A stretch of DNA of 64,000 nt from Vitrella brassicaformis CCMP3155 (lineage: Eukaryota; Protista; Chromerida), in contig CDMY01000223.1 of the NCBI GenBank assembly GCA_001179505.1, positions 62,001 through 126,000 on the forward strand, written 5' to 3'. This document shows positions 13,970 through 18,825 of this stretch, piece after piece. The notes beneath the pieces were generated by a model, which saw only the letters and a list, made by a program, of their open reading frames with translations, did no database searches and was not told the origin of the DNA. How positions within the stretch are numbered: the stretch's first letter is position 1; every line of letters starts with the position of its first letter. The position numbers and the translations under genes are program-made.

Positions 13970-15243
13970 GTGAGGGTGGGGTGGTGGGTGGGTGGGGTGG
14001 TCAGGGGGGGAGGCGTGGCACGGGTGTAGATATATGCTGTGTGGGGGTGTGGGTGTGGGTGTGAGGGATGCGACGCCTTCATTGAGACATTCATTGAGTC
14101 GTGTGGCTTGTTTGAGAGACGGAGGAGTCACCTGAATCGAATCAACTGAGACCGAGTGTGCCATGTCAGTCAACTGAGTCAGTTCATTCATCTGTCAACC
14201 CTACACCTGACGGGTGGTGTGGTCCCCTTCAGCATCCCCCCCGCGCACACACGCACACACAAAACGCCAGCCAGCGACTGAAGGTACGCACACCACACCA
14301 ACACGCACACACAGGATAAGGCGGTCAGACAGCTCTAGACAGACAGACAGCAGACAGACCACCACTAGAAAACCACGCAGGCAGACACTCACTGTCATGC
14401 ATTGGCGCATCAATCCATCATGCATTTACCCACATGGAGCCATCCGCGGTGAGCTGAACACCGCATCGTTCGTTCGATAAACCGGCCAGACAGACAGCAC
14501 GGCAAGAGCCGCCACGCCCACACGAGCAAGCCAAGCCAAGCCACGGGAGTGAGGGAGAGAAACACGCACCAATCACTCACTCACTGTGCTGCGAAAAAAG
14601 CAGCAGGGAAGGAAAGAAGGAAGACATGCATGTCATGTAAAGTCATGTAAATGGGCGGAGTTAGTTGTAGAAAACCCCCGCAGTACGTACCTCCCGACGA
14701 CCAGACAGACCACCTTGTGCGGTCTCGGCAAACACGCAGCTAGCCACACTTTGACACGCAAGACGCACACACACACACACACACACGACAACTCTTGCCC
14801 CCTCCTGCCCTGCCTGACTCAAAACACACATATGGCCACCCAGCTCTCTCAGTCTCTCACTTGTCACATCTATCACACACACTGTCCCCCACCGATTTCG
14901 ACGGCGTGGCTGCTGCAGATCGCCCCGGGTCCGAAACAAGGAGTCTGCCATGAACTTCGGGTCTCATGCACTGCACCTGCCACGCCGTCAAAATCAATCG
15001 CGGATGACATCCCATCACATCACCTCACGGCACGTAACAACAAGGCCAGCCCTGCCTGACGAAAAACCTGGATCTGTCTGGCGGCAGGGGCAGCAAGGGG
15101 GAGGGTGTGGTGTGGTGTGGCGTGAGGCAACCAACCACATCCCACGGCGTGCATCAGATGACGCATCTATCCATCCATCCATCCATCCAAAACCCCCGCT
15201 AAGTACTGCACGTGCTGCCTGCCTGCCTGCCCTGCCTGCCTGC

Positions 15244-16785
15244 CTAGAACTGGCAGGAGGCGCCGTCGCACCCTCTGAACTGACCCTGGCCGAAGAACCT
15301 CGCCCTGCCCAGCGAGACAATGCCATCTGACACCCACAGACGTCAGCAACACGCCAGACGGTGTGGTGTGCCTATAGGATCGCTCTTTCCCTACTCCCTG
15401 CCCGCCCTGTGTGGCCTGGCCTTACTTACCGTCGTCGTAGACCTTTCCAGAGTTGAACTGGAAGCACATAACACACGAAGAGAGAGACGGGACAGTCAAG
15501 TCACAACCACTTTACTTCAGCTTGTTCGGTCCTTTTCCCCTCCCACTCTCTCTCTCTCTCTCTCTCTCTCTTGTGTCTGTGAGTGAGTGAGAACTGACGT
15601 TGAGGTTGGAGCCGATGCCGCGCGGCCCCCTGTTGTAAGCAGGACCCACAATGCTCACACCTGGGCAGGCAGATCCACAGCCATGCAATGTATTCCATGC
15701 ACCTTCAGCCATCCATCCATGTGTGTGTGTGTGTTTCTTGGTCTTACGGGATTGGAGCTGGCGTCTGGCGGGGTCCTCGGGCTTGGGCTCCTCAGCGTCA
15801 CGCGGGTCGGGGCCGTTGAGGATCTCGGCCACTGCGCAGTACCCCTCGGGGGCGTCGGCGGCGTCGGCCTCGCCACCGCATCCCCCCTCTGGCTTGGGGC
15901 GGAGCAGTACGGCTCTCTCCTTGTCGATCTCCAGATACTCTCCTGCAGAGAGGCATATACACACCTCGTTCCTTCTGTCGCTGGGCAGGCCACTCCCTCT
16001 CCCCATCCCCCTCCCACTCACTCACCGTTCAAGAAGACGACTTTGACGGATCCCTGGCTCTTGTTCTTGGTGACATCCCGCACTTTGAAGTACCGCTCGA
16101 GGACGTCGCCGTTCTTGGCCAGCAGGTCGTCGATGTAGAGGCCGTCCAGCTGCAGCCATATGTGGATGGATGAACCAACACACCACACACGTCAAAAGAC
16201 GCACGCCGTGTGGACCAACACATATGCAACACATGGTGCTGTGCTGGTGTGGGTGCAGCGTGTGTGACTTACGTTTTCGAGGTCATCCAGCGAGTGTGTG
16301 ATGAAGTCAAAGGGGCTCTGGTAGATGGAAACAGCACAGCGCGGAGAAAGGGAGACAGACGACACGTGCATGACATGTTGGCTGACTGACTATCACGAGC
16401 AGCGCACCTCCACGTCGGTCTTCGCCTTCGTTTCTGCACGCCCACGACAGCACACACAGATACGCACACATTCGCCCGTGTGCATGCAATTTTCTCTCCC
16501 TATGCCCTCCGTCGTAAGTCACTTACGGATGACGTTCTTTGTGGCCTTGGTGCCAATCACCAGGCCGTTTTCGTCCGGCTTGAAGTCCTGCAGTAAGGAG
16601 GGCGGGGTGGTGGCAGGTGAACAAACCACGTCTCTCCCTGTCTGTGTCTGAGTGATGCGACTGAGCGACTAGACTCACTCACCTTGGCCATCTCCACCGC
16701 CGCGAAGGTGATGCCAAGCAGCAGTACTATCGTCACGCTGAACAAGGGATCGCACACACACACACACACGCACACACACAAGCCG

Positions 16786-16817
<32 letters not shown>

Positions 16818-17238
16818 TGGCGTTTTTGGTGTGTGGTGTGCGGTGTATGAATGTGTGTGGATGTGCTGGTGGGCCTCTACCCACATACATGTAGAGGATG
16901 ACGACGCCGAAGATGACCCACTTGAGGCGCTTGTTCTCCTTCCGCTCGCTCATCATCTGCTTGGCGGCAGCCGTCACCTCGTCGATGCTGCATCAGCCGC
17001 ACACACACACACACAGACACGGAGAGAGAGGCAGGTACTTGCATTGCCTGTCCCCATCTCCCCGCCAGGCATCACTGTGTCAGTCACCCCTCACTCACCT
17101 GAACATGCCATCCTGGTTGGTGTCCCAGGCCTTGAGCAGCTGCACAATGCGCTCCGTGTCGTTGCCCGGCGTGGACGTGGTCGATGCATTCTCGAACGCA
17201 ACGGTTCTCTGCTTGGCGTTCTGCTTCTCTGTCGACAT
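15244..17238 (-). CDS. EF-hand / single-TM / luminal-domain protein, paralog A
   Basis: Spliced: MSTEKQNAKQRTVAF...LLKAWDTNQDGMF|SIDEV (canonical EF loop), KWVIFGVVILY|IVTIVLLLGITFAAVEMAK, DFKPDENG, GEYLEIDKERAVLLRPKPEGGC...GYCAVAEILNGPDP, ARRQL, |DGIVSLGRARFFGQGQFRGCDGASCQF* (TAG 15244-15246). Confidence 0.8.
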
Positions 17239-17412
17239 GACTGGGAGGGGCGGATGTTACAGAGGGGCAGATCTGTCGATGGGAGAGTGAGGAATGGGGT
17301 GGGGCGACGGCTGGAAGGGCTGGAAGACGATTGTAGAAAGATTCGTGAAGACCCGGCGGTGAAGTCTGAGCAGCCGTTTCAGGCAGCACCCTAGGCAGCA
17401 GAGTCTCTCGGA

Positions 17413-17470
17413 ACCCTACCCCCAAACCGTGCACTCCCCTACCCCACAAACCCTGCACTCCCTCAAACCT
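17413..17470. promoter_or_regulatory. Duplicated C-rich motif in the shared promoter of the paralog pair
   Basis: cctacccccaaaccgtgcactccc followed directly by ctaccccacaaaccctgcactccc within the 258-bp ATG-to-ATG interval. Confidence 0.4.
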
Positions 17471-17496
17471 GGCACGGCTCGTTTTTTTGAGCCGCC

Positions 17497-18825
17497 ATGT
17501 TGGCGGCGAAGCAGAAAGAGAGGACTGAAAGGACTGAAAGGACTGCTGCGTTCGCGAGGGAGGCTGTCAGGACATCAGGCGACGAGTCAGACCCCGACCG
17601 GATTGTGAGGCTGCTGCGGTCATGGGACACAGATGGGGATGGCATTTTCAGGCGAGTGACGCAGAATGAATGAATGATGGGAGGAAAGGCAGATCTTACA
17701 TGTATCATTCCATCTGGCTGTCTGTCCGTCTGTCTGTGTGTCTGTCTGTGTGTCTGTCTGTCTGTGTGTTCAGCGTCGACGAGGTAGCGGAGGCGGCGCG
17801 CATGGTACTTCGACAGAAGAAGAAGGGCAGGGGCCTTCAAAAGGCCGTCTGCACCGCGGCCATCCTCTATGCCGTCACCATTCCGATTCTCTTCGGTGTT
17901 ACTCTCGGTGCTATGGAGATGGCCAAGGACTTCAGGCCGGACGACAACAGCATCCTCTTGAGCACCCGCGGCGACAGGAACGTCATCCGTAAGCGCCACA
18001 CGGCAGCCCACGGGAGGGATGGCGGCCATGAGGATCAAACATGCTGCCTCATTCTTTGGTTCTGGCTGGCTGCAGGGACGAAGCGGAAGATCTATGTGCA
18101 GTCACCGTTCGAAATGGCCAGCAAATCTCTGGCCGACCTGGAACGAGTACTCTTAACTCACACGCACACGTGCACGGCCGCAGGCAGGCAGGCAGGCACT
18201 CCCATGCCGCTCATGCGAGTGCATGTTGTTCATCTCCTCGTGTGCTTCACATCCATCCATCCATCAGGTGGACAGCATATACATCGACGACCTGCTCGCG
18301 GGCAACGGCGAGGTGCTGCAGAGGTTCTACAAGGTCGAGATGATCACCAAGGCCAAGGCCTCAGAAAATATCAAAGTCGCGTTCTTCGGCGGTGACTACC
18401 TCGAGGTCACCAGCGAGAGAGCCCTGCTGTTCCGCCCAAAGCCGGCGGAGGGCTGTGGCGAGGCCAAGGCCGCCGACACTCCCGACGGGTATTGCCCCGT
18501 GGCCGAGATTGTGAATGGCCCCGACCCGCGTGAAGAACAGACTCGGCGGCGGCTGGCGACTACGGCCATCCCTGAGCCGCTGTACCCCATCGGGCCGCGC
18601 AACATCGGAGGCAACGTATACTCGTCATTCAACACGGGATCGATATACGAATCTGGTGAGGGAGTCAGCGCGGCGGGAGCAAGTCTCTGTTTGAATCGTG
18701 TGCTGCCTGTGTGCGCGATGCGGTGCGGTGTGTGTGACCTGTCAGATGGCATAGTGTCCCTTGGGAGGTCACGGTTCTTCGCGCAGCACCAACAGAGGTT
18801 CTGTCAGGGCCCCACGTGCACATAG
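17497..18825 (+). CDS. EF-hand / single-TM / luminal-domain protein, paralog B
   Basis: gccgccATG at 17497. LLRSWDTDGDGIF|SVDEV (GC-AG intron 17652-17773), AVCTAAILYAVTIPILFGVTLGAMEMAK, DFRPDDNS, GDYLEVTSERALLFRPKPAEGC...GYCPVAEIVNGPDP, TRRRL, |DGIVSLGRSRFFAQHQQRFCQGPTCT*. Confidence 0.85.

What the first reader, a model, noticed from the sequence alone, without database searches (positions are those of the whole stretch)
15244..18825. Head-to-head paralog pair: cytosolic EF-hand, TM, luminal domain, RRxL site and a conserved disulfide-capped C-terminal peptide
Seen: two genes transcribed divergently with 258 bp between ATGs (17238-, 17497+) are paralogs along their whole length. Each has one canonical 12-residue EF loop (DTNQDGMFSIDE / DTDGDGIFSVDE), a basic stretch, one long TM ending EMAK, and a luminal domain with a conserved C...GYC pair. 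An acidic linker ends in RRQL / RRRL, followed by a ~60-aa tail that aligns well: GPRGIGSNLN-FNSGKVYDDDGIVSLGRARFF...CDGASC versus GPRNIGGNVYSSFNTGSIYESDGIVSLGRSRFF...CQGPTC. Two intron positions are shared. Established: RxL/RRL-type motifs are secretory-pathway processing sites in alveolates (PEXEL/TEXEL) and for site-1 protease. Inference: a co-regulated, possibly heteromeric Ca2+-responsive precursor system that releases a Cys-capped peptide into the lumen or outside (extrusome, wall or adhesion cargo). I do not recognise a named family.
Basis: partly seen in the sequence, partly recalled or inferred. Interest (0 to 1): 0.78.

Follow-up and report, generated by a model that had tools for sequence, protein, structure and literature searches.

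The report
EF-hand membrane proteins with RxL tail
Two back-to-back genes of the alga Vitrella encode membrane proteins with a calcium-binding loop inside the cell and, outside, a small domain followed by a nearly invariant Arg-x-Leu motif and a conserved Cys-looped tail; they belong to a large unnamed family of marine protists in which that motif most likely marks a cleavage site.

Summary
Window 15244-17238 (-) and 17497-18825 (+) are two expressed, spliced genes of Vitrella brassicaformis. They are identical to database proteins P0005 (305 aa) and P0001 (302 aa), 50% identical over their full length (E 1e-108), with 258 bp between the ATGs.

They are not an isolated pair. About 30 loci of the family lie in this genome, and a profile search found 346 relatives, in Chromera, the colpodellid Alphamonas, a dinoflagellate and a green alga. 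ESM Atlas look-alikes also point to diatoms and haptophytes. No Pfam family covers anything but the EF-hand.

Family-wide invariants:
- EF loop: D1 113/118, G6 114/118, E/D12 114/118.
- An E-x-[SA]-K-[DE] motif at the outer end of the TM helix.
- R-x-L before the C-terminal tail: R 95/100, L 91/98. RRL occurs in 47 of 102 ectodomains against 4 expected.

AlphaFold2 gives one helix running from the EF-hand through the membrane, a confident beta domain with no clear fold relative, and a disordered tail.

Cleavage at RxL is the best-supported reading but is unproven. The heteromer and co-regulation ideas are unsupported.

The parts
15244..17238 (-). Gene A, 11 exons, protein P0005 (305 aa)
   Evidence: Model built and corrected by P0005. 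Spliced contigs support the exon chain.
17497..18825 (+). Gene B, 5 exons, protein P0001 (302 aa)
   Evidence: The translation equals P0001. Spliced contigs in four runs.
17239..17496 (.). 258-bp divergent intergenic region. Transcript contigs reach 17382 (A) and 17439 (B), leaving about 57 bp between the 5' ends.
   Evidence: table 8.
16978..17124 (-). EF-hand loop of A (residues 39-50, DTNQDGMFSIDE), split by intron 1
   Evidence: Loop ligand positions are conserved across the family.
17626..17783 (+). EF-hand loop of B (residues 44-55, DTDGDGIFSVDE), split by the GC-AG intron 1
16695..16920 (-). TM helix of A (W70-V94, split by intron 2), followed by the E-M-A-K-D motif
17844..17915 (+). 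TM helix of B (residues 76-99), part of one predicted helix spanning 53-102
   Evidence: pLDDT 93-98; positive-inside.
16408..16433 (-). 26-nt microexon of A (QTKAKTDVE)
   Evidence: Joints 16317>16408 and 16433>16527 in three runs; P0005.
17931..18513 (+). Beta ectodomain of B (residues 105-229, introns included), with the Cys pair C209...C222
   Evidence: AlphaFold2 pLDDT mostly above 90. No clear fold relative.
15755..15766 (-). RRQL of A (R243-L246). The family motif R-x-L corresponds to R244-Q245-L246.
18544..18555 (+). RRRL of B (R240-L243)
15247..15754 (-). Tail of A (residues 247-305, three introns included), ending C-D-G-A-S-C-Q-F
   Evidence: pLDDT below 50.
18556..18822 (+). Tail of B (residues 244-302, one intron included), ending C-Q-G-P-T-C-T
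   Evidence: pLDDT below 50.

Best explanation
Genes A and B are two of about 30 Vitrella members of a widespread, unnamed protist family of single-pass type II membrane proteins, with the N-terminus in the cytosol. Each has four parts. (1) One cytosolic, probably Ca2+-binding EF-hand, whose exiting helix is predicted to run on without a break into the TM helix. (2) A nearly invariant E-x-[SA]-K-[DE] motif at the outer membrane face. (3) A small disulfide-braced beta domain outside. (4) After an acidic flexible linker, a nearly invariant R-x-L motif followed by a conserved tail of about 59 aa with a terminal C-x4-C loop. Shown here: gene structures, expression, paralogy, family membership and motif conservation. 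Predicted or inferred: topology (from charge bias and fused domains) and the fold (AlphaFold2). Also inferred: the RxL motif is a secretory-pathway processing site, cut either by an S1P-like subtilase or by the kind of RxL protease known from apicomplexans and diatoms. Cutting there would free the tail peptide, or leave it non-covalently attached, while the EF-hand, TM and beta-domain stub stays in the membrane. The EF-hand would couple cytosolic Ca2+ to trafficking, oligomerisation or exposure of the protein. The head-to-head arrangement is a product of local inverted duplication. It gives a shared promoter region but need not mean a heteromer.
For: Gene models and expression. Paralogy. Family size and range. 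EF loop ligands conserved: D1 113/118, D/N3 107/118, G6 114/118, E/D12 114/118; relatives pass Pfam EF-hand thresholds. Topology: net charge +2.5 before the TM against -1.0 after it, with N above C in 111 of 118 sequences; the same N-module is fused to GH17+CBM, lipase_3 and M43/PAN domains. Structure: one helix 53-102, beta domain with pLDDT above 90, tail with pLDDT below 50 in both models. RxL: R 95/100 and L 91/98 in the 121-sequence alignment; it is the near-invariant column among 27 ectodomains whose tails fall into at least three unrelated types; RRL occurs in 47 of 102 ectodomains against 4.1 +/- 2.0 in shuffles, and in the last 80 aa 39 against 1.7. Tail: the most conserved region in the near subfamily, 0.69 against 0.48 for the beta domain. 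[quoted passage not shown]
Against: No cleavage product has been seen, and no proteomic data were available. The residue two places after the Leu is E/Q/D in only 22 of 96 sequences, so the motif is not a classical PEXEL. Gene A has RRQL, not the strict TEXEL RRL. The motif sits near the C-terminus, unlike the N-terminal PEXEL and diatom RXL domains. No protease was identified in this genome. The low pLDDT of the tail may reflect a shallow alignment rather than true disorder. P0001 (gene B) and the paralog P0002 score below the Pfam EF-hand gathering thresholds (about 15 bits against 25), and loop position 8 is Phe. Ca2+ binding is untested.
Confidence: 0.45

Rival explanations
1. The RxL motif is not cleaved. 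Motif and tail stay on the intact ectodomain as a binding, oligomerisation or adhesion element, for example a flexible Gly/Asn-rich arm that orders only on a partner or in an oligomer.
For: The tail is highly conserved within the subfamily, as expected of a working part of the mature protein. No cleavage data exist. AlphaFold2 cannot exclude induced folding.
Against: A three-residue motif kept at 91-95% while both flanks and the tail type change completely is typical of a recognition site for an enzyme or receptor, not of a structural element. It lies in an acidic, low-confidence linker.
Confidence: 0.27
2. The motif is cleaved, but the tail is a C-terminal propeptide or sorting signal that is discarded. 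The working product is the membrane-anchored EF-hand, TM and beta-domain protein.
For: Diatom RXL domains are removed propeptides. Across the family the tails are short (median 52 aa) and of several unrelated types.
Against: In the Vitrella subfamily the tail is better conserved than the beta domain, 0.69 against 0.48. It also keeps a Cys pair, which is unusual for a throw-away propeptide.
Confidence: 0.13
3. A and B form a co-regulated Ca2+-responsive heteromer through pairing of their single EF-hands.
For: Single EF-hands usually pair (established knowledge). The two genes share a 258-bp divergent promoter region, and both are expressed in all four runs. A second head-to-head pair of the subfamily lies at C347.
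Against: complex prediction gave no answer, which is evidence neither way. Most family members in this genome are solitary loci. A and B are not each other's closest relatives: A is 62% identical and B 56% identical to the C964 paralog, against 50% to each other. The A/B contig-depth ratio ranges from about 0.3 to 3 between runs, though contig depth is a poor measure. The C347 pair shows a 98% inverted repeat over the first exons, which points to duplication or gene conversion as the cause of the arrangement.
Confidence: 0.12

Closest known systems
TEXEL/PEXEL substrates of Toxoplasma ASP5 and Plasmodium plasmepsin V
   Same: An Arg-x-Leu core (often RRL) in proteins of the secretory pathway. 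The organism is a close free-living relative of Apicomplexa. The abstract of PMC4764566 says ASP5 also matures substrates at C-terminal ends.
   Different: No sequence homology to known substrates. The residue two places after Leu is E/Q/D in only 23% of sequences. The family and its motif also occur in a green alga, and Atlas look-alikes point to diatoms and haptophytes, so the motif is not an apicomplexan invention. A clade-D aspartyl protease in Vitrella was not checked.
Site-1 protease (S1P/SKI-1) substrates such as ATF6 and the plant RRIL/RRLL precursors
   Same: Type II membrane topology with a luminal R-x-hydrophobic-x site. The family consensus [RG]-R-[RKQ]-L-[QLA] fits R-x-L-Z. The S1P consensus is from my own knowledge, not tested here.
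   Different: There the released part of interest is the cytosolic N-terminal domain, after a second intramembrane cut. Here the conserved part lies C-terminal of the site. No bZIP or other effector domain is present. No S1P ortholog was identified here.
Diatom RXL-domain proteins (silaffins, cingulins, Silicanin-1, SAPs)
   Same: An RRL/RXL tripeptide in luminal parts of secretory and membrane proteins, removed by a still unknown protease (PMC5525289). Atlas look-alike clusters suggest diatom relatives of this family.
   Different: The diatom RXL domain follows an N-terminal signal peptide. Here the motif precedes a C-terminal tail in a signal-anchored protein. There is no biosilica-type composition.
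STIM1
   Same: An EF-hand on one side of a single TM helix, thought to pass a Ca2+ signal across the membrane (my own knowledge).
   Different: Inverted topology: the STIM EF-hand is luminal, with a SAM domain. No homology.

Membership tests
EF-hand (Pfam PF13405/PF00036) | 12-residue loop with ligands at positions 1, 3, 5 and 12, Gly at 6 and a hydrophobic residue at 8, flanked by helices | tested here: met
   DTNQDGMFSIDE and DTDGDGIFSVDE. Family columns: D1 113/118, D/N3 107/118, G6 114/118, E/D12 114/118. Helices 31-43 and 53-102 flank the loop. Position 8 is Phe, outside the PROSITE pattern as I recall it.
EF-hand (Pfam PF13405/PF00036) | Score at or above the Pfam gathering threshold | tested here: not met
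   P0001 and the paralog P0002 each score 14.8 bits against a cut-off of 25. The exon pieces of genes A and B gave no EF-hand hit. Relatives P0089 (50 bits) and P0092 (25.8 bits) pass.
PEXEL/TEXEL substrates | Motif RxLxE/Q/D (PEXEL) or RRLxx (TEXEL) | tested here: inconclusive
   B has RRL (in RRRL) and A has RQL (in RRQL). In the family, R 95/100, L 91/98 and the middle residue R in 51/100. The residue two places after Leu is E/Q/D in only 22/96.
PEXEL/TEXEL substrates | Cleavage after Leu by a clade-D aspartyl protease | not testable with these tools
   No proteomic data. The protease ortholog was not sought. PMC8540915 does not say whether chromerids have clade D.
S1P substrates | Luminal R-x-(hydrophobic)-Z site | tested here: met
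   R-[RKQ]-L-[QLA] sits in a flexible acidic linker of the outside part. The residues I recall as excluded at the cleavage position (V, P, D, E, C) occupy 11 of 97.
S1P substrates | Cleavage by S1P | not testable with these tools
   Needs experiment.
Diatom RXL-domain proteins | RXL shortly after an N-terminal signal peptide | tested here: not met
   No signal peptide. The motif lies a median of 52 aa from the C-terminus.
Any known ectodomain fold | Significant structural match | tested here: not met
   Foldseek against PDB: no hit at E<=0.001. VIA-align wide: best Z 5.4-5.8 (VirK, 5xta_A), below the usual noise level of 7-8. The best Atlas matches by shape are unnamed or EF-hand-labelled diatom and green-algal clusters, all with TM-scores of 0.40 or less, most likely relatives.

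The most novel reading that the evidence does not exclude
The family is an ancient system of Ca2+-coupled, membrane-anchored peptide precursors shared by alveolates and green algae, and probably by diatoms and haptophytes. Its RxL site would then be processed by the same secretory-pathway machinery that apicomplexan parasites later used for host-targeting (PEXEL/TEXEL) and diatoms use for their RXL domains. The released Cys-looped peptides would act as extracellular signals, adhesives or antimicrobials.
Probability: 0.15. Interest if true: 0.85.

Novelty: new variant of a known kind. Interest (0 to 1): 0.6.

Why it matters
If RxL is a cleavage site here, a free-living photosynthetic relative of Apicomplexa carries dozens of endogenous substrates of an RxL-type secretory protease. 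That would make the pre-parasitic role of PEXEL/TEXEL-like processing, and the identity of the unknown diatom RXL protease, directly testable. The family also offers an uncommon architecture: a cytosolic Ca2+ sensor joined rigidly to a TM helix and an outside domain. It is abundant in marine protist transcriptomes, yet it has no name and no Pfam model beyond the EF-hand.

Tried and rejected
- Pfam on all exons and on the full proteins found only sub-threshold EF-hand hits and a chance dCache_3 hit over the TM.
- An ESM Atlas search with exon 4 alone gave nothing useful.
- The PDB sequence search with the family profile found only weak EF-hand chains, E >= 0.07.
- Word-index searches found only Vitrella proteins and one near-identical environmental contig. 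The third search, with the 121-row profile, was swamped by candidates and added nothing.
- A tree of the near subfamily was unresolved, so it could not tell whether the two head-to-head pairs were duplicated as units.
- Complex prediction on the EF-hand plus TM parts of A and B: no answer (score 0.02, mark 0.34), evidence neither for nor against binding.
- Literature searches found no description of this family, and no statement on a plasmepsin V/ASP5 ortholog in chromerids.
- The pseudogene or artefact reading is rejected, because both genes are intact and spliced in RNA-type assemblies.
- Reversed topology is rejected on charge bias and on the fused extracellular-type domains.
- A GPI-signal reading of the tails was considered and dropped, because the tails are not hydrophobic enough (by eye, not computed).
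Full report
**Organism and method.** The window is contig C223:62001-126000 of a 72.7-Mb, 1064-contig assembly. Database proteins identical to the genes are labelled Vitrella brassicaformis CCMP3155, a free-living photosynthetic relative of Apicomplexa. Searches used single exons by reference, or one uninterrupted open frame (window:18223-18822, which reads through the last intron of gene B without a stop). After that they used the database proteins those searches returned (P0001, P0005). Exons were joined only inside local scripts, to check reading frames and to build one tree.

**Observation.** Gene B (+) has five exons, and its translation equals P0001, 302 aa. Gene A (-) has eleven exons and equals P0005, 305 aa. 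My first model of A failed in frame. The annotated protein and the RNA contigs showed a 26-nt microexon (16408-16433, QTKAKTDVE) that cannot be found by eye.

Spliced contigs from three studies carry the joints of the models. Gene B is complete in four runs and gene A in three; run X2 holds only fragments of A. Three joints (the GC-AG first intron of B and introns 1 and 2 of A) are not listed as joints, but follow from contiguous record positions in the contigs. Transcript contigs reach 17382 for A and 17439 for B, so the 5' ends lie about 57 bp apart within the 258 bp between the ATGs.

A and B are 50% identical over their full length, E 1e-108. All four introns of B have a counterpart in A at the same position and phase.

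**A family, not a pair.** A six-frame search of the genome with exon 4 of B found six more genes with the same ectodomain and tail (C964, C271, C821, C460 and two at C347). The C347 pair is also head-to-head. The N-terminal module alone hits many more places. With the family profile, about 30 loci match.

A profile search of 1.84 billion representatives gave 346 proteins at E <= 1e-3. Named members come from:
- Vitrella;
- Chromera velia (Cvel_8506, Cvel_8116);
- the colpodellid Alphamonas edax;
- the dinoflagellate Biecheleria cincta;
- the green alga Cymbomonas tetramitiformis.

The ESM Atlas places P0005 at 0.90-0.96 next to large unnamed clusters whose known taxa are mostly diatoms, with some green algae and haptophytes. 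The best Atlas matches by shape to my ectodomain model are clusters of the same kind, at low TM-scores of 0.40 or less. Pfam recognises only the EF-hand, below threshold in P0001 (gene B) and the paralog P0002 and above it in some relatives. In other organisms the EF-hand plus TM module is fused to GH17+CBM, lipase_3 or M43/reprolysin+PAN domains.

**Anatomy.**
- In the 121-sequence alignment the EF loop keeps its ligand positions: D1 113/118, D/N3 107/118, D/N/S5 110/118, G6 114/118, E/D12 114/118.
- The 15 residues before the TM carry a net charge of +2.5 and the 15 after it -1.0, with the N side higher in 111 of 118 sequences. Together with the extracellular-type fusion partners, this puts the N-terminus in the cytosol.
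- AlphaFold2 on B (mean pLDDT 81) predicts helices 2-27 and 31-43, the loop, and then one unbroken helix 53-102. That helix contains both the EF exit helix and the TM segment (pLDDT 93-98). A beta domain follows at 105-229, mostly above 90, and the region from about residue 240 is below 50.
- The ectodomain of A modelled alone gives the same picture.
- The outer end of the TM carries a nearly invariant E-x-[SA]-K-[DE] motif: E 86/118, K 106/119, D/E 113/119. Its role is unexplained.
- The beta domain has no clear structural relative. Foldseek found nothing at E <= 0.001, and the best VIA-align score was Z 5.4-5.8 to a VirK protein, below the tool's usual noise level.

**The RxL motif.** This is the main result. 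In an alignment of 27 divergent ectodomains, the Arg of R-x-L is one of only two columns conserved at 90% or more. The linker before it varies from a few residues to about 100. The tails after it fall into at least three unrelated types.

In the 121-sequence alignment the columns read [R37/G21]-R95/100-[R51,K11,Q9]-L91/98-[Q28,L17,A10]. RRL occurs in 47 of 102 ectodomains against 4.1 +/- 2.0 in residue shuffles. Within the last 80 residues the count is 39 against 1.7 +/- 1.2. Control tripeptides (KKL, LRR, RRE, RRG) are not enriched. The sequences are related, so descent contributes to this, but the contrast with the unalignable flanks argues for selection on the motif itself.

The tails have a median length of 52 aa. 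In the near subfamily the tail is the best conserved region, at mean pairwise identity 0.69, against 0.48 for the beta domain and 0.46 for the EF-hand. It ends in a C-x4-C pair.

**Interpretation.** A short, nearly invariant motif in a flexible acidic linker of the outside part is what a protease or receptor recognition site looks like. Arg-x-Leu processing is documented in related lineages:
- PEXEL cleavage by plasmepsin V, and TEXEL cleavage by Golgi ASP5, which according to the abstract of PMC4764566 also matures substrates at C-terminal ends;
- removal of RRL-ending RXL domains of diatom proteins by an unknown protease (PMC5525289).

The consensus equally fits the S1P rule R-x-hydrophobic-Z, which I cite from my own knowledge. 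Because the family and its motif reach at least a green alga, and probably diatoms and haptophytes, I favour a broadly distributed protease over an apicomplexan-specific one. The data cannot decide, since the residues after Leu discriminate poorly. I put about 0.6 on cleavage in total: 0.45 for the whole best explanation, in which the released tail is the working product, and 0.13 for a discarded propeptide. I give 0.27 to an uncleaved motif. Cleavage, Ca2+ binding and any downstream role are inferred, not shown.

**Head-to-head arrangement.**
- The heteromer test gave no answer.
- Contig depths for A and B are of the same order in three runs, but the ratio ranges from about 0.3 to 3. The tool warns that such depths cannot rank genes.
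- Most family loci are solitary.
- A and B are each closer to the C964 paralog than to each other.
- The C347 pair has an inverted repeat of at least 182 nt at 98% identity across its first exons, against 74% for the window pair.

I read the arrangement as the result of local inverted duplication, followed in one case by gene conversion. A shared promoter region is a possible by-product, not evidence for a two-component system.

**Novelty.** I found no paper on this family, and no Pfam model for the TM-proximal motif, the beta domain or the tails. I file it as a new variant of a known kind, namely membrane-anchored secretory precursors with an RxL-type site. What is new is the cytosolic EF-hand joined to the anchor and the breadth of the family.

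Noticed in passing
window 17652-17773: Intron 1 of gene B has a GC donor (GC-AG). The contiguous record positions of spliced contigs confirm its removal.
   Followed up: yes
window 16408-16433: A 26-nt microexon in gene A, flanked by introns of 93 and 90 nt.
   Followed up: yes
L007:1-834 (G000:C347, about 276.8-277.6 kb): A second head-to-head pair of the same subfamily. Its first exons lie in an inverted repeat of at least 182 nt at 98% identity, which points to gene conversion or a young inverted duplication.
   Followed up: partly
proteins P0054, P0058, P0093 (other organisms): The same EF-hand plus TM module is fused to M43/reprolysin+PAN, lipase_3 and GH17+CBM domains. It behaves as a portable Ca2+-sensing type II anchor.
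   Followed up: partly
proteins P0028, P0060, P0089, P0092, P0128, P0132, P0137 (environmental): After RRL these relatives carry a different short conserved tail, of the type G-G-A-L-M-T-S-G-S-F-T-M-M-A. Its meaning is unknown.
   Followed up: no
window 16683-16700 and 17901-17930 (E-M-A-K-D in both genes): An E-x-[SA]-K-[DE] motif at the outer end of the TM helix is nearly invariant across the whole family (K 106/119). It is unexplained.
   Followed up: partly
window 15748-15942 (P0006): A 281-aa database model of gene A lacks 24 residues inside this exon, including the GYC cysteine. No spliced contig supports it, so it is probably an annotation artefact.
   Followed up: partly
window 17489: G>T in the 5' UTR of gene B in contigs of runs X7 and X8. 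This may be a strain difference or an assembly error.
   Followed up: no
L019:2748-3896 (downstream of gene B): A convergent iron-containing alcohol dehydrogenase gene lies on the same transcript-type contig as gene B, which suggests overlapping 3' ends.
   Followed up: no
window 15159-15240, 15530-15585, 16744-16821, 18180-18265: Microsatellites of the types (CATC)n, (CTGC)n, (CT)n and (GT)n, mostly in introns and flanks. They attract very deep, chimeric contig matches, and the reads tool skipped some of them.
   Followed up: no
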